From NCBI RefSeq assembly GCF_001194135.2, contig NC_069000.1, forward strand, positions 28,661,979-28,705,523: a stretch of 43,545 nucleotides of DNA, given 5' to 3'. Under the pieces are notes generated by a model. It saw nothing but the letters and a program-made list of their open reading frames with translations. It was not told the DNA's origin and did no database searches. Position 1 is the first letter of the stretch. Every line of letters starts with the position of its first letter. The position numbers were made by a program, and so were the translations under genes. The stretch comes from Octopus bimaculoides (taxonomy: Eukaryota). Positions 1,211 through 38,329 of the stretch are shown here, piece by piece.

Positions 1211-1360
1211 TTTTTTTTTTTTTCCTCTCCTTGTATGTTCTTTCATTCAGAAAAAGAGTGTGTACTCAAAATGTAAAACATTTCCTTCGTCTTCATATTA
1301 TATCCTTTTGCACCATATACAATATATATATTTATACATACACATATAAACATACATACA

Positions 1361-1396
<36 letters not shown>

Positions 1397-2318: not shown

Positions 2319-2639
2319 GGGAGAATTTACGAAAAAAACAACAACAGATGAGGACAGGTGGTGTAAACATACAAAGTTTTATACTTTAAATATATTCCTC
2401 TTATTATCATCAAAGAATGTATATATGCATTTTAATACTCAAACTGTTTTTTAACATTTTCTATTATTCTCAAAGACTTTTGATAATCTTTTTCTAAAAA
2501 AGTGAAACCGGTTAAGTAAATAAATATCTTTAAAATAAGTGCATTTTCAAACCTTCTTTCATATATATTTCCACTCGTACGGTATTCCACAACTTTACTT
2601 TATTATATATATATATATTTATAATTATTTCAAGGCTGT

Positions 2640-2709
2640 ATATATGTATATATACTCTTATACTTGTTTCAGTCATTTCTGCAGCCATGCTGGAGCACAG
2701 CCTTTATAT
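2640..2709 (-). mobile_element. SINE 3'-tail remnant (copy A)
   Basis: ctcttatacttgtttcagtcatttctgcagccatgctggagcacagccttta. Same tail family as the SINE tails at 24385, 27715, 35591 and 38450. Confidence 0.8.
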
Positions 2710-3227
2710 AAATATATATATGTATATTTATATATATATACGTGTCATCATCACTAAATATTGTAATTTAGTAAAATGATAGTATTTAAAATCGTTGTTG
2801 TTAAGTAGTTTTCATAACTTCCAAAGGTCCCTGTCACTGGTCCCCGTATCACATGTGTTGTGATGATCTACTTTCAAACTAATTTGTGAAATTAAGCAGG
2901 ATGTATTTTAATCTGTATAATATTTATTTAAGCAACTTACCAGACATATTATTGCAAATTCTTTTGAAATCTCTCCCTGACAAGTTTATTCCACATTGTG
3001 ATTGTATTTCTATAAGGACTCAGCTGAGAACAGAACTCCAATATCATCTCCAACATAGAAGTTTGGATTACAAATGATTTTCAGTCTACTGTTAATGGAC
3101 TAACCAATTTACTTACCATACAATATATATATATTTATACTAATACAAGCATACACATATATACATTTCAACAATCAACATATACACGTTAAACGTACTA
3201 AACTATAAACTACCAACTTGTTTCAAC

Positions 3228-4151
3228 ATGAATGCAACCCATTTGTCTGATCCTGTTATGTTTTCAAGATTAGTTGTTTTTAGTATCATACCATTCTTCC
3301 TAATTGTGGGACTCATTGGTAACATGTTTGTGATATATATTTATGTACGCCAATCCCAGAAAAGCAACGTAGAAACATTCATCCTTGTACTAGCTGTCAT
3401 TGATCTCATTGGATGTATCTTTGGAATGCCTCTGGAAATGGCTGAACTTTATCCTGCAATTCAATCAAACTATTTGTGTAAAATATACAAGTTTATTGTC
3501 TACACCAGTTCTGTCATGTCGTCCTTCATTCTTCTCACAGTTTCCATTGAAAGGTTCAGAAAAATATGTTGTCCACTTGGAAAACAAATTACCCAAAATC
3601 TACGTCAGGCACTTATTGTTTACATAACAATAATATCGGTTGTACTACTCATACCAACTGTTACCTTTTTTGAAGGTGTTCCCTTTACCTATGAAAACAA
3701 GACATACATGATATGTGACCTTGACCTTAGAAGGTCATCTGTCTGGTCATATACTCTATCAATCGTAATTGTTCGCTTTATACTTTTCCTAACCATGACT
3801 GTACTTTATTCCTTTATTTGGAAGACTATTACTCAGCATCTCAGGAAAAAGCAAGGTAAAGAAGAAGCTCCCAGACAACAAGGAATCAATCGCACAATCA
3901 TTGTACTTATCTCAATCTCTGTTTTGGATTTTGTCAATTTTTCACCAACATGTGTCTTCTTTGTCATACATCCATACTGTAAAGATTCTAATTTGTTGCA
4001 GATCTTTAAATTAATTTTATATCGTGCTTGGATACTAAACCCCTCCTTAAATCCCATGGTGTATGGATTCTGCAACAAAAATTTCCAGAAAAGTTTTGTA
4101 AATATTTTTACTAGGGATAAAATTATTTTTGAAATGGAAGAGAAATTTTAG
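3228..4151 (+). CDS. Class A (rhodopsin-like) 7TM orphan GPCR, 307 aa, intronless CDS
   Basis: Seven hydrophobic segments. TM1 GN (GLIGN), TM2 LAVID, TM3 Cys (YLCK) plus ERF (DRY variant), ECL2 Cys (MICD), TM5 Tyr (VLYS), TM6 Pro (NFSP), TM7 NPMVY, then a helix-8-like FCNKNFQ. N-glycosylation sequons NAT and NKT. No stops. Confidence 0.93.
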   Translation: MNATHLSDPVMFSRLVVFSIIPFFLIVGLIGNMFVIYIYVRQSQKSNVETFILVLAVIDLIGCIFGMPLEMAELYPAIQSNYLCKIYKFIVYTSSVMSSFILLTVSIERFRKICCPLGKQITQNLRQALIVYITIISVVLLIPTVTFFEGVPFTYENKTYMICDLDLRRSSVWSYTLSIVIVRFILFLTMTVLYSFIWKTITQHLRKKQGKEEAPRQQGINRTIIVLISISVLDFVNFSPTCVFFVIHPYCKDSNLLQIFKLILYRAWILNPSLNPMVYGFCNKNFQKSFVNIFTRDKIIFEMEEKF

Positions 4152-4262
4152 GATTTGGTTTACACCACACATTCAATAGAGAGGAATTCTTTCAAGTAGA
4201 AGAAACATTTTCTTTGCTGACCATTTCCTGAGAAGAATACTATTTTCTTTCTNNNNNNNNNN

Positions 4263-4336
4263 AAATTGGAAAGGTTTGATTTCAAACCATGCCAGCATGG
4301 AAAGTGGATGTTAAATGATGATGATGATGATGATGA
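4263..4336 (+). mobile_element. RTE-type 3' tail fragment ending in (GAT)n
   Basis: ccatgccagcatggaaagtggatgttaaatgatgatgat matches the LINE tail at 7195-7230. Confidence 0.75.
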
Positions 4337-5420
4337 ACCTTTTAAAATATGCTGTTTATATCCTTGATCCAGTGTCAGTCTAAGGTCGGTTAGTATCAGA
4401 AAGGCCTATTTGAACACCTCAAGTTTCTCTGTTACATATTTATTCTAGCTTCTGTTGTAGTTTTATACTTTCTCTCGACCCATAACTGTGTATCAAAGTT
4501 CTCTTTTAAACTCCAAACTATTTGGAACCTACAGTTTCTGAATTACATATTAAATCTGCATTAAAAACATACTGGAAAAAAGAAAACAAAATTGTTGCTG
4601 TTGGTGTTGTCGCAGTCATCATCATTATTATTACCACCGTCATCATCATCTTCATCATCATAACTCTTTTGTAAACTTTTCCCTCCTTGAGTTTGTTGGT
4701 CAAGTTTTCTACACAGAATTATGTTATTCCTGTCTTTGTATCAACTTTTTTAAATCACAGTTTTAGACTGGCCAACCCATGGAGATCATCATTAATATCT
4801 GCACCTATGCTTGTTATATGTTCCTAACAATGGATTCACTTCTTTTGTGCAATTCATTTGTCAGAGAAAGGATTTAAAATTAATCTCTTGCGCTTTTAGC
4901 AATTCTAAGACAATTTAAAAAATAGCAATTAAAATTCTCTTTCAATGAAAATGTTTGATATTCTTTAATGAGCAAAAAATTATTTTGAAACCCAGCAACT
5001 CTTCAATCTTGTATTTTCATACATCATTAGCAACTTTTATACTTATTTAAGAAATAAACACTTCTAGTGTTGTGATTAACATTGTTCTCGTCTCACATTT
5101 CAACATTTATTTACGTGTCTTTGGTACAAGCAATGTATTATATATATGTGTGTGCGTGTTAATATGTTTGATATCTTCAATTTATGGAATGCATCCTGTT
5201 TGTAAACGTATTAAACCTAGTAATTTTATGTTTTGGAGATTGTCGTTAATGGATGTGTTGAATTTTACATATATTTTCCTATTTTGTTTAGTTCCACATG
5301 ACTCCAAATTGAGAAGACTTATTTTATCCAACACTTTAGGTACTTATTTCAAACCCTGCCAAAGCCTTCATTTTATCTAACCCTATCCAGAGGTAGAGAA
5401 CATAAAGTACCATTCAAGTA

Positions 5421-5867
5421 CCTGAGATGCTGAGTAATGGTCTTCCAAGTGGGGGAGTGAGGTGCAGTCATGGTTGGGAGAATTATGATGAGAACAATTA
5501 AGGCTGATGGAGTATGTAGCCAGGCTCCTGACCTTCTAAAGTTATTATCACATACCATGTACATCTTGTTTGCATAGGTGGGGGGAGCACTTTCGGGAGG
5601 GTAGCAGTTGGTACGATTGGTACAACCGATGTTGTTGTTGGGGAAACAGTGAGTGTCTGACGTGGATTTTGGGTGATTTGTTTTCCAAGTCGACAGCATA
5701 TTTTTCTGAACCTTTCAGTGGCAACTGTGAGAAGAGTGAGGGACGACATGATAGAGCAGGTGTAGACAATGAACTTGTATGTTTTGCACAAGTAATTTGA
5801 TTGAATTGCATGATGGAGTTCAGTTTCCGGAGGCGTTCCAGGGATACATCCAATCAGATCAATGACA
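5421..5867 (-). pseudogene. Inverted, truncated GPCR paralog fragment (end of TM2 to start of ICL3), A>G hypermutated on the + strand
   Basis: The reverse complement aligns to 3395-3845 (451 nt versus 447 nt) with one in-frame 3-bp deletion and one 1-bp frameshift in a T6 run. ORF-track pieces 5498-5791 (KFIVYTCSIMSSLTLLTVATERFRKICC) and 5373-5699 (WKTITQHLR) match the GPCR. TM1 and TM6-7 are absent. Confidence 0.92.
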
Positions 5868-7246
5868 CTGAAATTAACATGGAAAATATGCAGAAAACAA
5901 CCTTTGCCACACTCCAGGGAGAAAAACTAGAAGTAGTTGATAACTTCTGCTACCTAGGTGACCAAGTTTGTAGCGGGAGAGGGTGCACTGAAAGTGTAGC
6001 TGCTAGAATAAGAATAGCCTGGGCAAAGTTTAGAGAACTCTTACCACTGCTGGTGACAAAGGGCCTCTCACTCATAGTAAAAGGCAGACTGTATGACGCA
6101 TGTGTACGAACATCCATGCTACAAGGCAGTGAAACATGGGCCGTGACTGCTGAGGACATGCGTAAGCTTGCAAGAAACGAAGCCAGTATGCTCCGGTGGA
6201 TGTGTAATGTCAGTGTGCATATTCGACAGAGTGTAAGTACCTTGAGAGAAAAGTTAGACCTAAGAAGCATCAGTTGTGGTGTGCAAAAGATACGATTGCG
6301 CTGGTATGGACATGTGGCAAGACTGGATGAGGATAGCTGTGTGAAAAAGTGCCACAACCTAGCAGTTGAGGGAACCTGGGGAAGAGGTAGACCCAGGAAG
6401 ACCTGGGATGAGGTGCTGAAGCATGACCTTCGAACTCTAGGCCTCACCGAGGCAATGACTAGTGACCGGGACCTTTGGAAATATGCAGTACGTTAGAAGG
6501 CCCGGCAAGGCAAGTGCGTGCATAATCTGTGACCTCTGCCAGAAGTGTAGCCAGCTCACTAATTCATATTTTTACTTCACTGGACACTAAACTCTGCTTG
6601 CGAAGACCTGTTGGGGCAAGTGAATTTTGGAATTTGAAATTTGAAATCTGAAATCGAAATCGAACCAAATCCGATGACTGGCACTAATGCCAACCTCTCC
6701 TTCATTGGACACTAAACTCTGCTTGCGAAGACCTGTTGGGGCAAGTGAAATTGAAATCATAATTGAACCATACTCGATGACTGGCACCTGCGCCAGTGGA
6801 GGACTAACAGCACTGTCTCAGCGTGTTCATTACCAGAGCAGCTGTCTGGCTTCCGTGCTAGTGGCCTGTAAATAGCACCATTTGAGCGTAATTGATATCA
6901 GCGTTGCCTTCAAGCACTTGTGCTGGTGGCACGTTAGAAAATCATTCAAGTGAGGTCATTGCCAGTGCGCTGGACTGGCTCCCGTGCAGGTGGCACGTTA
7001 AATACACCTTTTTGAACGTGCCCATTGCCAGTACCGTGTGACTGGCCCTCGTGCCGGTGGCACGTAAAAGCACCCACTACACTCTCGGAGTGGTTGGCGT
7101 TAGGAAGGGCATCCAGCTGTAGAAACTCTGTCTGATCAGATTGGAGCCTGGTGCAGCTTTCTGGCTTGCCAGTCCTCAGTCAAATCGTCAAACCCATGCT
7201 AGCATGGAAAGCGGACGTTAAACGATGATAATAATAATATAATAAT
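5868..7246 (+). mobile_element. 5'-truncated RTE-clade LINE (C-terminal RT region, 3' UTR and GAT/AAT tail)
   Basis: Open frame about 5873-6496 contains LEVVDNFCYLG, ARIRIAWAKF, LYDACVRTSMLQGSETW, RLRWYGHVARL and GRGRPRKTW, typical of the RTE ORF C-terminus. The 3' UTR has internal repeats and ends ...gcatggaaagcggacgttaaacgatgataataat. Confidence 0.9.
6581..6749 (+). repeat. Two identical 44-bp direct repeats in the RTE 3' UTR
   Basis: tggacactaaactctgcttgcgaagacctgttggggcaagtgaa occurs at 6581-6624 and 6706-6749. Confidence 0.9.
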
Positions 7247-7260
7247 ATATATATATATAT

Positions 7261-7332
7261 ATATAAAGGCTGTGCTCCAGCATGGCTGCAGTCAAATGAC
7301 TGAAACAAGTATAAGAGTATATATACATATAT
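7261..7332 (+). mobile_element. SINE 3'-tail remnant (copy B, inverted near-identical twin of 2640-2709)
   Basis: The reverse complement equals 2640-2709 except for a 2-bp (ga) indel, with the same truncation point. Confidence 0.85.
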
Positions 7333-8359
7333 GTATATATATATACATATATGTATATATATACATATATATATACATATATGTATATATATATACATAT
7401 ATGTATATATATATACATATATATATATACATATNNNNNNNNNNNNNNNNNNNNNNNNNNNNNNNNNNNNNNNNNNNNNNNNNNNNNNNNNNNNNNNNNN
7501 NNNNNNNNNNNNNNNNNNNNNNNNNNNNNNNNNNNNNNNNNNNNNNNNNNNNNNNNNNNNNNNNNNNNNNNNNNNNNNNNNNNNNNNNNNNNNNNNNNNN
7601 NNNNNNNNNNNNNNNNNNNNNNNNNNNNNNNNNNNNNNNNNNNNNNNNNNNNNNNNNNNNNNNNNNNNNNNNNNNNNNNNNNNNNNNNNNNNNNNNNNNN
7701 NNNNNNNNNNNNNNNNNNNNNNNNNNNNNNNNNNNNNNNNNNNNNNNNNNNNNNNNNNNNNNNNNNNNNNNNNNNNNNNNNNNNNNNNNNNNNNNNNNNN
7801 NNNNNNNNNNNNNNNNNNNNNNNNNNNNNNNNNNNNNNNNNNNNNNNNNNNNNNNNNNNNNNNNNNNNNNNNNNNNNNNNNNNNNNNNNNNNNNNNNNNN
7901 NNNNNNNNNNNNNNNNNNNNNNNNNNNNNNNNNNNNNNNNNNNNNNNNNNNNNNNNNNNNNNNNNNNNNNNNNNNNNNNNNNNNNNNNNNNNNNNNNNNN
8001 NNNNNNNNNNNNNNNNNNNNNNNNNNNNNNNNNNNNNNNNNNNNNNNNNNNNNNNNNNNNNNNNNNNNNNNNNNNNNNNNNNNNNNNNNNNNNNNNNNNN
8101 NNNNNNNNNNNNNNNNNNNNNNNNNNNNNNNNNNNNNNNNNNNNNNNNNNNNNNNNNNNNNNNNNNNNNNNNNNNNNNNNNNNNNNNNNNNNNNNNNNNN
8201 NNNNNNNNNNNNNNNNNNNNNNNNNNNNNNNNNNNNNNNNNNNNNNNNNNNNNNNNNNNNNNNNNNNNNNNNNNNNNNNNNNNNNNNNNNNNNNNNNNNN
8301 NNNNNNNNNNNNNNNNNNNNNTATATATATATACATATATATATATTTGTATATATACA

Positions 8360-8445
8360 TGTATTGTTTGAGACCCCCTTCGGTCATGACTGACCATGGG
8401 ATTGCACCTAGAAAGTTACCCTCCCAGGCACAAGTCCGGGCAAGG
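8360..8445. mobile_element. Truncated interspersed repeat of unknown class
   Basis: gagacccccttcggtcatgactgaccatgggattgcacctagaaagttaccctccc: recognised from memory as a common octopus repeat end; only one copy in this window. Confidence 0.35.
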
Positions 8446-8460
8446 TTGTTGTTGTTGTTT

Positions 8461-8712
8461 AGTGAGGGGAATTTGCCTGTATTGCGGGAAACGGATTTGC
8501 TCTTTATGTAGAGTGGTTCTCCTTCTAAAGGTCAAACTCGTCTGTCCAATATAGTTGTATCCACAACCCGAGCAGGTTATTACATAAATTGGTTTCTCGG
8601 AGGCACAAGTGAAACTAGTTTAATTGTGAACCTCTGTCCTTGTTTGAAAAGGGAATCTGAGCCTTCAAGTAAGTTGAGGCAGGGTCCACAGTTTGGGCAT
8701 CCACATTTTTTT
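8461..8712 (-). mobile_element. Penelope-like element fragment: Cys-rich linker plus GIY-YIG endonuclease (frameshifted)
   Basis: Manual minus-strand translation gives KKCGCPNCGPCLNLLEGSDSLFKQGQRFTIK, a 1-nt frameshift, then SFTCASEKPIYVITCSGCGYNYIGQTSLTFRRRTTLHKEQIR. IY...CxxC..YIGQT...R...H is the GIY-YIG signature. Not present in the ORF track. Confidence 0.8.
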
Positions 8713-8819
8713 AAACTTTACAAATCAACCATGAAACCAGCGTGTTTTTATGTGGTACTAGTGCAAGTGCATGTTATGTGCCACAGGCATGAGGGCATCT
8801 TATGTGGCACAGGCATACA

Positions 8820-8972
8820 CCGGAGTGGTTGGCGTTAGGAAGGGCATCCAGCTGTAGAAACTCTGCCAAATTTAGATTGGAGTCTGGTGTTGCCATCCGG
8901 TTTCACCAGTCCTCAGTCAAATCGTCCAACCCATGCTAGCATGGAAAGTGGATGTTAAACGATGATGATGAT
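8820..8972 (+). mobile_element. RTE 3'-tail copy (truncated LINE or SINE tail)
   Basis: cggagtggttggcgttaggaagggcatccagctgtagaaactctg...gatgttaaacgatgatgat, closely similar to 7087-7230. Confidence 0.85.
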
Positions 8973-8979
8973 AGATGTA

Positions 8980-9280
8980 AGCATAGCTGTGTGGTTAAGA
9001 AGTCTTCTTCACAACCATGTGACCTTATGATTAGTCCTGATGTGCAGCCTCTTGCGTAGGTGTCTTTTACTGGGCCTAATAAAACTTTGTGAGTGGATTG
9101 GGTTGACAGAAACTGAAAGAAAACTGTGAGTGGGAGTGTGGGAGAAAGAGAGAGAGAGTCTTTGTGCCTGTATTTGTCCCCCATCACTACTTCTCAACTG
9201 GTGTTGGTGTGTTTATGTCCTCTGTAACTTAATGTTTCTGCAAAAGAGGCCTATAGAAAAAGTACCAGGCTTAAAAAGAA
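8980..9280 (+). mobile_element. Degenerate tRNA-derived SINE
   Basis: Head gctgtgtggttaagaag, body gagtggattgggttgacagaaactgaaaga, and the ggtgttggtgtgtttatgtcc segment shared with other copies in the window. Confidence 0.7.
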
Positions 9281-10974
9281 AATTTGTACTTCTGATACAG
9301 TGTAAAATAAAGTGCAAAACCAACACAGAGAACTGGTGCAGGCTTTAGAATTTTGTATTTTTTGTATAGTTGGGACTTAATCCTTGTCATAATTCAACGC
9401 ATGTTAGCAAGGAGGCATGATACTGCAAACTCTTGCTCCTCACTGTGCCAATGATATCTCATTCAGCTGCAGTTTTTATGCAAATAAAAGGTAATTGTTC
9501 TAAGTTTAGGAATGATTGATCTACGTTATGTTTTTGATCAGTACAATCTCCAACTATCATCAGATATCTTATTTCTGAAGGTGTATTTGGTATCAAACAT
9601 TAGAAAAATTATGATCTGAAGATAAAATAAAATATAATCTGATAAATTGTTTCAAAAGAATTTAACAATTAGTGTTGATTACTAGCTTCCAATAATCTAA
9701 CCATGTTGCACTGTTGCTTGCATTAGCAAAACAGAAAAAGGAAAAAAGGATAATAATCATGTAAGATGGTTTAAAACCCCATCAGTCATTTTTCTAATAC
9801 AGTTATTTATTCAGCAGTTTACCCTAAAACCTTTATAATTTCAACACTGAAAATAAGAAATCTCTCACCCAAAGTACCTGTCCTACATCTATTTCAACTC
9901 TCATCATCTCTGATCTCATGTCAATAGTGTTATACAAAGAAGCCTGTCTTAACCTAGTTGAGCAATGATAAGACAGACTCAGACTAAACCCATTCTTCCC
10001 CTACCCCATTTCTCTTCTTTCTCACATTTTCCTTCACTTGTCTTCTCTTTTCACATAACACTTCATCTTAGGAATCTTATTTCATCTAGATGTCATGATT
10101 AATATGCAATGACTAACATGTCAGAACTATCTGTCTCTGATGACCTTTACTGCAGAATGACATATGACTAATACAATCAAATCTGCATCAAAGAGATTTG
10201 GGATTTCTCTTTAGAACCAGAATCTAGAGTTTTGCAACATTTTTCTTTCTTTTTCTTCTCTTGAAGCGGAGATTTTGGGGTTTTTTTTTCTTTTGCAAAG
10301 AAAACATAAGGCTAGAATTTGAATTAAGATATACAACTATTGAATAGTGATGCTTTTGCAAACTGTGTGTTGACAAGTCTTCTGAAAGTACTATTTTAAA
10401 ACATATTTGACAGAAAGCTATATCTGTCTCCCTATAGTTCATCTATATAGTCAAACTCCAAATACAATCAGTCCTTTCCTTAAAAAAGAAAAGGAATTTT
10501 TCTGTGGAACTACCCTTGTTCATATATTCTCATTATTAAATTTTGTCTTTAACTGAGCTGAGTTAATTTGAGTGAGCAAGTAAGCTTCAGTCAGTGAGTA
10601 AACCTGAACCAGTAAGGAAACTTGAGCCAATAAATAACCTTGAACCAGTAAGGAAACTTGAGTCAAGAAGATAGATCTCACTTTCTCTCTGAATGTGGGT
10701 GTGTATGGTGCATGCTAGACAGAAGCATCGCCTTGAGGTTATTGTGAGCTCACAAGGGGACAGCAATTGTCAAAGGATTTTTAGATGGGATATGTAAATT
10801 TTCTTAAAAATGAGATATGTAAATTAGGTACAATACATATATTTGAGACACATTCTCAAAAAATGAAAAAAGAACCCTTCATTAAGATAAAAATATGAAT
10901 ATGAAGTACACAGTGTTATGAGTAAGAGTAAACACGAATGATGATGCATCAAAATCTAATGTCCTTTTCTAATA

Positions 10975-37734: not shown

Positions 37735-37880
37735 TGTGTGGTAAGAAGCTTGCTTCCAACTACATGGTTCTAGGTTCAGCCCCACTGCATGGCACCTTGG
37801 GCAAGTATCTTCTATTATAGTCTCAGACCAACAAAAGCCTTGTGGGTGGATTAGGTAGACAGAAACTGAAAGAAGCCCAT

Positions 37881-37882
<2 letters not shown>
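37735..37882 (+). mobile_element. SINE head/CORE
   Basis: tgtgtggtaagaagcttgcttccaactacatggttctaggttcagccccactgcatggcaccttgggcaag. Confidence 0.8.
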
Positions 37883-37923
<41 letters not shown>

Positions 37924-38329
37924 CATGTGTGTATGTAAACAATTATAAATAAAGGCAAAAGAAAAAAATTTTCTATGCCAATATGCTGAAAAAATAAACT
38001 TTATATCGTCTAACCACATACAATATTTTTCACTATAAATACACAGTGTGTTGAAACAAGGTTAGATGATATAAAGTCTATTTTTTCAGCNNNNNNNNNN
38101 NNNNNNNNNNNNNNNNNNNNNNNNNNNNNNNNNNNNNNNNNNNNNNNNNNNNNNNNNNNNNNNNNNNNNNNNNNNNNNNNNNNNNNNNNNNNNNNNNNNN
38201 NNNNNNNNNNNNNNNNNNNNNNNNNNNNNNNNNNNNNNNNNNNNNNNNNNNNNNNNNNNNNNNNNNNNNNNNNNNNNNNNNNNNNNNNNNNNNNNNNNNN
38301 NNNNNNNNNNNNNNNNNNNCCCCCCCCCC

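What the first reader, a model, noticed from the sequence alone, without database searches (positions are those of the whole stretch)
5421..5867. GPCR pseudogene carries an ADAR-type A-to-G hyper-editing signature fixed in genomic DNA
Seen directly, by hand alignment of the reverse complement of 5421-5867 to the intact gene at 3395-3845. There are about 80 substitutions. On the GPCR-sense strand 49 are T>C (A>G on the + strand), versus 5 C>T, 4 A>G and 4 G>A. That is 49 of 164 Ts (about 30%), often in clusters (ttt>ccc twice). The changes ignore codon position and wreck TM helices: ALIVYITIISVVLLIP becomes TLTVSPTTTSVVPIVP, and TMTVLYSFIWK becomes TMTAPHSPTWK, so the copy is the derived state. 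Only 3 of 49 changed As have a 5' G on the edited strand, against 38 of 164 (23%) available. Established: ADAR hyper-edits long dsRNA in clusters, disfavours a 5' G, inosine is reverse transcribed as G, and coleoid cephalopods have exceptionally high A-to-I editing. Inference: this segment is a DNA copy of a hyper-edited antisense GPCR RNA, meaning RNA editing became heritable. An alternative is deamination of the DNA strand in a GPCR mRNA:DNA hybrid, which would give the same strand polarity.
Basis: partly seen in the sequence, partly recalled or inferred. Interest (0 to 1): 0.93.

Follow-up and report, generated by a model that had tools for sequence, protein, structure and literature searches.

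The report
ADAR-type A-to-G hypermutation in octopus DNA
An inverted fragment of an octopus receptor gene lying next to the intact gene has about 30% of its adenines on one strand changed to guanine, in the pattern left by the RNA-editing enzyme ADAR; two more such tracts in nearby octopus DNA suggest that RNA editing of hairpins can be written into the heritable genome.

Summary
RC(5421-5867) aligns to the intact 7tm_1 GPCR gene at 3395-3845 with 80 substitutions. Of these, 49 are T>C in gene sense, which is A>G on the + strand.

An O. sinensis ortholog polarises 44 of 59 copy-lineage changes as A>G. Changed As have a 5' T or A (54% and 45%) and rarely C or G (9% and 8%), the ADAR preference. 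The tract is limited to the segment complementary to the gene: spacer, upstream flank and the abutting 5'-truncated LINE all have symmetric spectra. The gene arm has 0 of 34 possible synonymous A>G changes, so the event was a block, not gradual drift.

Scanning about 204 kb of octopus DNA found two further cases. In O. sinensis (L002), both arms of a 690-bp hairpin are hit on the same strand (32.5% and about 19% of As), while loop (2.4%) and flanks (1-1.4%) are not. A paralogous segment that lost one arm (L006) is unaffected, so resident DNA was changed after the duplication.

Best reading: ADAR hyper-editing of a + strand hairpin transcript, written back into germline DNA, probably through reverse transcription.

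The parts
3228..4151 (+). Intact intronless GPCR gene (307 aa, rhodopsin-family 7tm_1). It is a member of an octopus-expanded family and the nearest known relative of the copy.
   Evidence: ORF. Pfam 7tm_1 E=2.6e-32. 17 octopus paralogs or orthologs. T>C-tolerant matching gives 24 incompatible residues against 31 or more for any other paralog.
3395..3845 (+). Gene arm of the inverted repeat (codons 57-206). It carries no A>G excess.
   Evidence: Alignment. The gene lineage has 14 changes with no bias. 0 of 34 synonymous A>G opportunities were used, against about 10 expected.
3846..5420 (+). Spacer, the 1,575-nt loop of the putative hairpin: end of the CDS, the sequence downstream of the stop codon, and a SINE/LINE-type tail at 4262-4336. 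It is orthologous to O. sinensis and not hypermutated.
   Evidence: Synteny with L001 3516-5018 and 5126-6297 at 85-87%. Transitions for 4263-5420 are 14/11/14/12, symmetric in every 200-nt bin.
5421..5867 (+). Inverted GPCR fragment (GPCR sense on the - strand) with A>G hypermutation on the + strand: 49 of 164 sites, 44 of them polarised as derived. It is absent at the orthologous O. sinensis site.
   Evidence: With the gene arm the + strand RNA pairs at 419 positions (-657 kcal/mol), against 368 (-507 kcal/mol) for the - strand.
5868..6496 (+). 5'-truncated non-LTR retrotransposon (LINE): the C-terminal about 210 aa of ORF2, from an RT-PHD-C-terminal domain family. It abuts the copy within 5 nt or less and is not hypermutated.
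   Evidence: tblastn to a second LINE in the window starts at nt 5873. Homologs carry PF00078 and PF00628; the closest, P0032, reads GAINTENMQKTT where the window has TEINMENMQKTT. Transitions against the O. sinensis LINE are 18/16/12/16.
6497..7262 (+). LINE 3' UTR with internal direct and tandem repeats (6557-6752; about 65-nt units at 6779-7069). The family's 3' tail (CCCATGCTAGCATGGAAAGCGGACGTTAAACGATGAT...) decays into AAT/TA microsatellite.
   Evidence: Sequence. Repeat families D12-D15 and D18. The same tail occurs at window 4262-4336 and 8906-8977 and in L002 at 7793-8110.

Best explanation
A 447-bp internal piece of the neighbouring GPCR gene (or of a very close paralog) was duplicated in inverted orientation 1.6 kb downstream of the gene. 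It sits exactly at the 5' end of a truncated LINE. This happened in the O. bimaculoides lineage after its split from O. sinensis.

Any + strand transcript that runs from the gene through the copy folds into a hairpin of about 450 bp. ADAR, which is exceptionally active in octopus, deaminates about 30% of the adenosines of such a duplex and avoids those preceded by G.

In one event the edited sequence of the copy arm was then written into germline DNA. The most likely route is reverse transcription of the edited transcript, which carries a LINE 3' tail, followed by replacement of the resident copy by the cDNA (RT-mediated gene conversion). Edits in the gene arm were either not included in the tract or were removed by selection as a block.

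Shown: the spectrum, context, polarity, tract limits and architecture; and, at a second locus, that resident DNA of both hairpin arms changed after a duplication while a hairpin-less paralog did not.

Inferred: that ADAR is the enzyme, that the substrate was RNA, and that an RT carried the change back.
For: (1) The change is A>G only and on one strand: 49 against 4-5 for every other transition class. 44 of 59 polarised copy-lineage changes are A>G, and the other 15 match the 14 on the gene lineage.
(2) The 5' neighbour order is T, A >> C, G (54, 45, 9, 8%; P=1.9e-6) and the 3' neighbour is flat. This matches universal upstream-G depletion and the reduced downstream-G preference reported for octopus (PMC5625713).
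(3) The tract equals the complementary segment. The upstream flank (14/11/14/12) and the abutting LINE (18/16/12/16) are symmetric; the copy is 47/8/7/10.
(4) The edited strand is the GPCR-sense transcript strand. The changes turn A:U into G:U, so the + strand hairpin keeps 419 pairs against 368 on the - strand.
(5) The change came as a block: 0 of 34 synonymous A>G in the gene arm against about 10 expected, P about 1e-5. Three arms of different ages all show a similar level, 19-33%.
(6) Independent locus L002 (O. sinensis), with the collinear paralog L006 as outgroup: A>G per A is 1.4% in the left flank, 16-24% in the left arm, 2.4% in the loop, 32.5% in the right arm and 1-4% beyond it. Left-arm private changes are 20 of 24 A>G on the + strand, right-arm private changes are 82 of 100, and L006 private changes are 9 with no bias. 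5' G is depleted (4/60 and 1/19).
(7) In the L002 arms there is almost no - strand A>G (1 and 0 changes), which fits editing of one transcript.
(8) Third case, L005 7090-7479: 58 of 171 As changed, 5' G 0/18.
(9) The signature occurs in two species and in two separate assembly records, GCA_001194135.2 and GCA_006345805.1.
Against: No read-level, population or RNA evidence could be obtained, so everything rests on assemblies.

No transcript spanning gene and copy has been shown, and an AATAAA lies at about 5053 between them.

The write-back step has no demonstrated precedent in animal germlines. RT-mediated conversion is established in yeast (my own knowledge).

The copy is not a clean derivative of the adjacent gene. 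There are 31 non-T>C differences, several clustered at gene position about 3705-3760 and resembling paralog P0003, so the partner or its history is not fully known.

No target-site duplication could be found for or against a single insertion of copy plus LINE.

O. sinensis breaks at the very same nucleotide with a different insert, and this is unexplained.

LINE tails are so common that their presence downstream of both hairpins (n=2) is weak evidence for the RT route.
Confidence: 0.55

Rival explanations
1. Born-edited chimeric retrocopy. While a LINE was integrating 1.3 kb downstream of the GPCR stop codon, its reverse transcriptase switched template from the LINE RNA (at the position now 5868) to a local antisense GPCR RNA. 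That RNA had been hyper-edited in a duplex with GPCR mRNA. The copy was therefore never unedited in DNA.
For: The copy abuts a 5'-truncated sense LINE within 5 nt or less, and the edited strand is the LINE-sense strand, the geometry expected for a template switch. The LINE part is unedited, as expected for a single-stranded part. The change came as a block. The copy is absent in O. sinensis.
Against: It needs an antisense GPCR transcript, for which there is no evidence. It needs a special explanation for landing 1.6 kb from the nearest relative among at least 17 paralogs. No target-site duplication was found. At L002 the left arm is resident DNA shared with paralog L006 and was changed after the duplication, which a born-edited insertion cannot explain there.
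Confidence: 0.2
2. ADAR deaminated the DNA itself. RNA from one arm of the nascent + strand transcript hybridised to the displaced non-template (+) DNA strand of the other arm, and ADAR converted dA to dI in that RNA:DNA hybrid. Replication then fixed G.
For: It gives the same strand polarity, duplex-limited tracts, unedited loop and flanks, and action at the resident locus. ADAR activity on the DNA strand of hybrids, and ADAR roles at R-loops, are reported (Zheng 2017, Jimeno 2021, Shiromoto 2021, as cited in PMC10209271; PMC7955049 listed).
Against: In ordinary R-loops the hybridised DNA is the template (-) strand. Essentially no - strand A>G is seen in the arms (1 and 0 changes at L002; 2 in the window copy), so an unusual 'trans-arm' hybrid has to be assumed. 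Converting 20-33% of dA in one episode, while escaping hypoxanthine repair, is far beyond anything reported. That last point is my own knowledge.
Confidence: 0.15
3. This is not ADAR. An error-prone DNA polymerase with a WA>WG signature (Pol eta type) synthesised the copy during the duplication or repair event and left T:dGTP misincorporations.
For: The WA motif (A preceded by A or T) coincides with the observed 5' preference. The copy lies at a retroelement junction where repair synthesis occurs.
Against: 45-54% of WA sites changed, far above Pol eta error rates of a few per cent (my own knowledge). A>G:A>C:A>T is 49:2:3, whereas Pol eta and somatic hypermutation give many transversions at A. 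All other classes sit at background. At L002 both arms of resident DNA changed on the same strand and the loop between them did not, which a single synthesis tract does not produce.
Confidence: 0.04
4. Artefact. The Gs come from edited RNA or cDNA contaminating the assembly, from polishing with RNA-seq reads, or from a misassembled paralog.
For: No raw reads could be examined. The window has many N gaps (4254-4262, 7436-8321).
Against: The tract lies in a gap-free stretch, 4263-7435, between orthologous non-coding flank and a LINE. It carries 15 ordinary substitutions and 2 indels beside the A>G changes, as an old genomic resident should. The same signature appears in two species and two separate assembly records. 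At L002 the edited and unedited paralogs sit in one assembly 1.1 Mb apart.
Confidence: 0.04
5. Selection, not mutation. The hairpin is a functional RNA (an hpRNA or siRNA precursor, or an editing-guide sequence for the GPCR), and only substitutions that keep pairing as G:U wobble were tolerated.
For: Inverted duplication of a gene fragment next to its founder gene is how hpRNA and proto-miRNA loci arise (my own knowledge). 94% of positions still pair in the + strand RNA.
Against: Wobble-preserving C>T at G:C pairs would be tolerated equally, but it is at background: 2 of 66 in the window copy against 44 of 164 for A>G, and 7 against 82 in the L002 right arm. Selection for pairing does not predict upstream-G depletion.
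Confidence: 0.02

Closest known systems
ADAR hypermutation of retroviral genomes that contain inverted or antisense sequence, recovered as A>G in proviral DNA (Hajjar & Linial 1995; Felder et al. 1994; cited from my own knowledge, not retrieved here)
   Same: A long intramolecular or sense/antisense duplex in an RNA that is later reverse transcribed. Up to tens of per cent of As on one strand become G in DNA.
   Different: Those are exogenous or vector retroviruses whose life cycle includes reverse transcription. Here the targets are a cellular gene fragment and resident genomic repeats in the germline. At L002 the change happened at an existing locus, not in a new insertion.
APOBEC 'DNA editing' footprints in endogenous retroelements (PMC4866542, PMC2873906)
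   Same: Strand-biased, clustered, motif-specific deaminase hypermutation fixed in genomic copies. It is detected by comparing copies and polarising with a consensus.
   Different: APOBEC deaminates C in single-stranded cDNA and gives G>A with GG/GA context. Here the change is A>G with upstream-G depletion, confined to double-stranded (complementary) segments, and it includes non-retroelement sequence.
RNA hyper-editing of long hairpins in Octopus bimaculoides transcripts (Porath et al. 2017, PMC5625713)
   Same: Same organism, same substrate type (long, nearly perfect inverted repeats), same motif, and a similar density of changed As.
   Different: That is a difference between RNA and DNA. 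Here the Gs are in the genome assembly itself.
Proposed mechanistic coupling of A-to-I editing to A>G DNA mutation ('mutational replacement', PMC10209271; deaminase-driven reverse-transcription mutagenesis, PMC11817618)
   Same: It postulates that edited RNA is copied back by a polymerase with RT activity, or that ADAR acts on DNA:RNA hybrids.
   Different: Those proposals rest on site-wise statistical correspondences or on cancer and immunoglobulin spectra. Here there are whole hyper-edited tracts with duplex-defined borders and a natural hairpin-less control.
Repeat-induced point mutation (RIP) of fungi (my own knowledge)
   Same: Hypermutation aimed at duplicated sequence in the germline, which inactivates the copy.
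   Different: RIP is C>T on both strands, acts on DNA repeats in any orientation and uses DNA methyltransferase-like enzymes. Here the change is A>G on one strand and only in inverted (hairpin-forming) repeats.
hpRNA and proto-miRNA loci born by inverted duplication of a target gene fragment (Allen et al. 2004; Wen et al. 2015; my own knowledge)
   Same: The architecture: an inverted fragment of a gene next to, or able to pair with, its founder gene.
   Different: No evidence here for small RNAs, and the substitution pattern is mutational rather than structure-preserving selection.

Membership tests
ADAR hyper-editing footprint | A>G on one strand only, with other classes at background | tested here: met
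   49 against 4-5. Polarised 44 of 59. L002 82/100 and 20/24. L005 58/113.
ADAR hyper-editing footprint | Upstream (5') G depleted; U/A preferred | tested here: met
   Window: T 54%, A 45%, C 9%, G 8%, P=1.9e-6. L002 right arm G 4/60, P=1.9e-8. L005 G 0/18. Reference motif in PMC5625713.
ADAR hyper-editing footprint | Dense clusters: tens of per cent of As in a long duplex | tested here: met
   30% (window), 32.5% and about 19% (L002 arms), 34% (L005). Median spacing 6 nt.
ADAR hyper-editing footprint | Confined to the double-stranded (complementary) region | tested here: met
   Window spacer, flank and LINE are symmetric. L002 loop 2.4% and flanks 1-1.4% against arms 16-33%. Sparing of the last 18-25 nt at the duplex ends is only suggestive (P=0.07 and 0.19).
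ADAR hyper-editing footprint | The arms are co-transcribed and edited in RNA, and the change depends on ADAR | not testable with these tools
No genetics are possible.
LINE-mediated retrocopy or chimeric retrocopy (template switching) | A foreign RNA-derived segment fused to the 5' end of a 5'-truncated LINE in the same transcriptional orientation | tested here: met
   Junction at 5867|5868. LINE homology starts at nt 5873 or before. The edited strand is the LINE-sense strand.
LINE-mediated retrocopy or chimeric retrocopy (template switching) | Target-site duplication flanking the whole insert | tested here: inconclusive
   The 5' flank ...ACCATTCAAGTA has no match after the tail. The tail runs into AAT/TA microsatellite, another repeat and an 886-N gap.
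LINE-mediated retrocopy or chimeric retrocopy (template switching) | Dispersed insertion, unlinked to the parent gene | tested here: not met
   The copy lies 1,576 nt from its nearest relative among at least 17 paralogs.
APOBEC DNA editing of retroelements | G>A (C>T on the cDNA strand) with GG/GA context | tested here: not met
   G>A and C>T are at background, 2-5 changes.
Repeat-induced point mutation (RIP) | C>T transitions on both strands of duplicated DNA | tested here: not met
   The change is A>G on one strand, and C>T is at background.
Pol eta / somatic-hypermutation-type A:T mutagenesis | WA hotspot, a large share of A>T and A>C, and per-site frequency of a few per cent at most | tested here: not met
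   The WA preference is present, but A>G:A>C:A>T is 49:2:3 and 45-54% of WA sites changed.
hpRNA or proto-miRNA locus (inverted duplication of a target gene) | An inverted fragment of a gene able to pair with the founder transcript | tested here: met
   Arms 3395-3845 and 5421-5867; 419 of 447 positions pair in + strand RNA.
hpRNA or proto-miRNA locus (inverted duplication of a target gene) | Small RNAs produced from the hairpin; substitutions preserve structure irrespective of type | tested here: not met
   Small RNAs were not testable. Wobble-preserving C>T is not enriched (2/66 against 44/164). There is no Rfam match in 2500-9500.

The most novel reading that the evidence does not exclude
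In octopus germlines, ADAR hyper-editing of hairpin transcripts is written back into the resident genomic locus as a block, by RT-mediated conversion or by direct deamination of hybrid DNA. This creates a recurrent, duplex-guided A>G mutational process that remodels inverted repeats, including fragments of cellular genes. It would be RNA-to-DNA flow of editing information and an animal counterpart of RIP.
Probability: 0.45. Interest if true: 0.95.

Novelty: new variant of a known kind. Interest (0 to 1): 0.82.

Why it matters
Whether RNA editing can feed back into the genome has been argued for years from indirect statistics: edited sites tend to become genomic G. It is also argued from contested models of somatic hypermutation.

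Whole hyper-edited tracts in germline DNA would turn that question into something testable genome-wide. The tracts found here have borders set by RNA duplex geometry, and there is a natural control in a paralog that lost one hairpin arm.

If real, three things follow. It is a new mutational force in cephalopod genomes, which combine extreme ADAR activity, abundant long inverted repeats and active LINEs. It is a built-in way to defuse long perfect dsRNA. And it is a caveat for editing surveys, because sites already converted to G are invisible to them.

It also shows how a coding fragment can be destroyed in a single step.

Tried and rejected
- Exact-protein look-ups of the window gene and of paralogs P0003 and P0005 returned nothing. 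So there is no DNA for those paralogs and no second O. bimaculoides assembly of this locus.
- Target-site duplication around copy plus LINE: none recognisable, because the 3' side is microsatellite, another repeat and a gap.
- Empty-site search: the sequence right of the O. sinensis break does not occur in the window. No synteny resumes within 8.6 kb downstream of the break in O. sinensis.
- Orthology of the two LINEs: rejected, given 78-81% identity against 85-87% for the flanks, many indels, and a PHD segment absent from the window copy.
- An intact paralog that already carries the Cs: rejected.
- CpG decay as the source of G/A differences at L002: rejected, because the complementary class is missing (1 against 23).
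- Sparing of duplex ends: not significant.
- Base-composition profile alone: suggestive only.
- Protein search with the inferred unedited ORF1 of the L002 element: no hits.
- Rfam scan of 2500-9500: nothing.
- Window 37735-37936, which looked like G>A hypermutation: ordinary CpG decay plus microsatellite misalignment in a SINE.
- Seven literature searches found no description of ADAR-type tracts fixed in cephalopod genomic repeats.
Full report
**1. The observation**

The window comes from an octopus. The gene product is identical to a database cluster whose relatives are all from O. bimaculoides or O. sinensis. ORF 3228-4151 (+) is an intact 307-aa rhodopsin-family GPCR (Pfam 7tm_1, E=2.6e-32).

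The repeat finder reports the inverted pair independently (I11 and I12). A computed alignment of RC(5421-5867) to 3395-3845 has 451 columns, 81.4% identity and two indels. The 80 substitutions are:

| Class (gene sense) | Count |
|---|---|
| T>C | 49 |
| C>T | 5 |
| A>G | 4 |
| G>A | 4 |
| transversions | 18 |

- T>C hits 49 of 164 Ts. Against the complementary class, the binomial P is 1.1e-8.
- On the + strand the change is A>G. The 5' neighbour of changed As is T in 20/37, A in 23/51, C in 3/32 and G in 3/36 (P=1.9e-6). The 3' neighbour is flat.
- The changes ignore codon position and produce F/L>P, I>T, Y>H and V>A in the helices.

**2. Direction of change and the parent**

Three lines of evidence bear on this.

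- The orthologous O. sinensis locus was fetched (L001/L002). With its gene as outgroup, 59 changes fall on the copy lineage: 44 T>C and 15 others, evenly spread. The gene lineage has 14 and the O. sinensis lineage 29.
- The copy therefore groups with the O. bimaculoides gene and arose after the species split. It then took on about 41 extra T>C changes above a normal background.
- Across 16 paralog proteins, 27 of the copy's 51 amino-acid differences are never seen, and all are of T>C type. The remaining differences are ordinary family variation.
- Allowing for T>C, the neighbouring gene is the closest known relative: 24 incompatible residues, against 31 or more for any other paralog.
- The fit is not perfect. 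A cluster of differences at gene position about 3705-3760 resembles paralog P0003.

**3. Surroundings**

- Synteny with O. sinensis covers window 2744-4244 and 4263-5420 at 85-87%. It stops exactly at 5420|5421, the border of the copy.
- O. sinensis has no inverted GPCR fragment there. It has a SINE with a longer LINE nested in it.
- In the window the copy abuts, within 5 nt or less, the C-terminal about 210 codons of a non-LTR retrotransposon ORF2. This is followed by its 3' UTR and tail, all in + orientation.
- No target-site duplication could be recognised.

**4. The tract is limited to the complementary segment**

Transition counts against O. sinensis are:

| Segment | window G / Osin A | window A / Osin G | window C / Osin T | window T / Osin C |
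|---|---|---|---|---|
| Spacer and flank 4263-5420 | 14 | 11 | 14 | 12 |
| LINE 5908-6427 | 18 | 16 | 12 | 16 |
| Copy 5421-5867 | 47 | 8 | 7 | 10 |

- The edited strand is the strand of the GPCR mRNA.
- Each change converts an A:U pair of the gene/copy duplex into G:U.
- The two arms therefore still pair at 419 positions in + strand RNA (-657 kcal/mol). On the - strand they pair at only 368 (-507 kcal/mol).

**5. A block, not drift**

If a site-by-site process had acted on both arms, the gene arm should have kept its synonymous A>G changes. It has 34 such opportunities. About 10 would be expected at the copy's context-specific rates, and none is observed (P about 1e-5).

**6. The signature recurs, with a natural control**

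A self-comparison of all octopus DNA fetched (about 204 kb) put three things at the top for single-class dominance: the window pair, an inverted pair in O. sinensis L002, and an element in O. bimaculoides L005.

*The L002 hairpin.*
- The right arm is 6423-7108, a retroelement ORF1 in sense orientation.
- The loop is 6306-6422.
- The left arm is the reverse complement, split by a later 614-bp insert.
- The left arm keeps an intact CX2CX4HX4C zinc knuckle (CYHCRKKRHVRVNC). The right arm reads CCHCGGRGRIGVNC.

*The L006 control.* L002 has a collinear paralog, L006, 1.1 Mb away. It is 96.4% identical over 8.2 kb of flank. It keeps the left arm but lacks most of the right arm, so it has no long hairpin. 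With L006 as reference, A>G per A site along L002 is:

| Region of L002 | A>G per A site |
|---|---|
| Left flank | 5/365 (1.4%) |
| Left arm | 11/67 and 10/41 (16-24%) |
| Loop | 1/41 (2.4%) |
| Right arm | 86/265 (32.5%) |
| Next 300 nt | 5/116 (4.3%) |
| Further out | about 1% |

*Three-way polarisation.*

| Lineage | Private changes | Of which A>G on the + strand |
|---|---|---|
| L002 right arm | 100 | 82 |
| L002 left arm | 24 | 20 |
| L006 | 9 | no bias |

- Upstream G is depleted in both arms: 4/60 and 1/19.
- A>G on the - strand is essentially absent: 1 and 0 changes.
- The left arm and its flanks are shared with L006, so resident genomic DNA was altered after the duplication. It was altered only where it can pair, and only in the paralog that can form the hairpin.

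*The L005 element.* L005 7090-7479 has 58 of 171 As changed relative to the consensus of three other copies, with 5' G at 0/18. An assembly gap lies just upstream, so its partner status is unknown.

*Short pairs.* Short SINE-sized inverted pairs, which are mostly independent insertions, do not show the signature.

**7. Mechanism**

The enzyme signature is that of ADAR: the spectrum, the motif, the density and the duplex limits. Octopus has the strongest RNA hyper-editing of long hairpins among the animals surveyed, with universal upstream-G depletion and a weak downstream-G preference (PMC5625713).

How the change reached DNA is inferred, not shown.

- *Favoured route.* The + strand hairpin transcript is edited, then reverse transcribed, and the cDNA replaces the resident sequence in one tract.
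  - This explains the single-strand polarity in both arms.
  - It explains the untouched loop and flanks.
  - It explains the block character and the change of resident DNA.
  - A sense LINE tail lies downstream of both hairpins and could recruit the LINE reverse transcriptase. Such tails are common, however, so this point is weak.
- *Direct deamination of DNA in RNA:DNA hybrids.* This remains possible. It needs an unusual hybrid with the non-template strand, because no template-strand changes are seen.
- *Born-edited retrocopy.* For the window alone, a chimeric retrocopy made by template switching at the LINE 5' end is not excluded. It does not explain the position next to the nearest relative, and it cannot explain L002.
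- *Other rivals.* Pol eta-type synthesis errors, selection for wobble pairing, CpG decay and assembly artefact are each contradicted by specific counts. These are listed under the rival explanations.

**8. Comparison with what is known**

- APOBEC G>A footprints in retroelements are the established case of deaminase hypermutation fixed in genomes (PMC4866542, PMC2873906).
- ADAR-type A>G hypermutation of retroviral genomes carrying inverted sequence is known from experiments (my own knowledge).
- A mechanistic link from editing to A>G DNA mutation has been proposed from site-wise statistics (PMC10209271; PMC11817618).
- Seven literature searches found no description of duplex-limited ADAR-type tracts in cephalopod germline DNA, nor of a hairpin-less paralog control.

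I therefore rate this as a new variant of a known kind. There is a substantial chance that the in-situ write-back is something categorically new.

**9. Limits**

- Everything rests on public assemblies. Reads, populations and RNA could not be examined.
- The exact origin of the inverted copy is unresolved.
- The identical breakpoint in O. sinensis is unexplained.
- The route from RNA to DNA is not established.

Noticed in passing
L002 5016-7108 (O. sinensis CM016864.1, about 3 kb upstream of the orthologous GPCR): A 690-bp hairpin made of a retroelement ORF1 region. Both arms are A>G hypermutated on the same strand (32.5% and about 19% of As), while the loop (2.4%) and flanks (1-1.4%) are not.
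   Followed up: yes
L006 13901-24020 against L002 3844-15174: Collinear paralogous segments 1.1 Mb apart on one chromosome, 96.4% identical over 8.2 kb and including a second copy of the GPCR locus. L006 lacks right-arm positions 120-751 and has the loop segment in flipped orientation, as if the arms had recombined and a deletion followed. It shows no hypermutation.
   Followed up: yes
L005 7090-7479 (O. bimaculoides CM046602.1): The 3' part of a non-LTR element with 58 of 171 As changed to G relative to three other copies, and 5' G at 0/18. An assembly gap begins about 200 nt upstream, so whether it has an inverted partner is unknown.
   Followed up: partly
window 5420|5421; L001 6297|6298; L006 about 21080: Synteny between the species ends at exactly the same nucleotide, yet different sequences follow: a GPCR fragment plus LINE in O. 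bimaculoides, and a SINE with a nested LINE in both O. sinensis paralogs. It may be an insertion hot spot or an older shared break. This is unexplained.
   Followed up: partly
window 5413-5425 and 5868-5878, read on the - strand: In GPCR-sense orientation the fragment is flanked by splice-site-like sequences: ttaatttcag|TGTCATT and CTCAG|gtacttga. The acceptor-like part lies inside the LINE. This may be chance.
   Followed up: no
window about 5505-5560 (equivalent to gene 3705-3760): A cluster of non-T>C differences makes the copy read SGAWL..., like paralog P0003, rather than SSVWS as in the neighbouring gene and its O. sinensis ortholog. It could be a short conversion tract or a slightly different parent. 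Few A>G changes fall in this stretch.
   Followed up: partly
L003/L004 (O. bimaculoides CM046606.1, about 90.88-90.92 Mb); L006/L007 (O. sinensis, about 19.30-19.35 Mb): The GPCR paralogs form same-orientation tandem arrays with roughly 8-20 kb spacing inside a gene call with a Diphthamide_syn hit that spans the whole locus. The window's ortholog (L002) lies inside a Cob_adeno_trans gene call.
   Followed up: no
window 6557-7069: The LINE 3' UTR carries a 125-nt direct repeat (6557-6627 and 6682-6752, 87%) and five units of about 65 nt (6779-7069). The O. sinensis relative has fewer units.
   Followed up: no
window 1211-1383 and 2146-2318; N runs at about 1397-2145, 4254-4262 and 7436-8321: Identical 173-nt copies lie on either side of an N gap, and there are several other gaps. 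These look like scaffolding artefacts of a short-read assembly. None touches 4263-7435.
   Followed up: no
window 37735-37936: A SINE copy that looked G>A hypermutated in pairwise comparisons. Against four other copies the changes are CpG decay plus microsatellite misalignment, so it is ordinary.
   Followed up: yes
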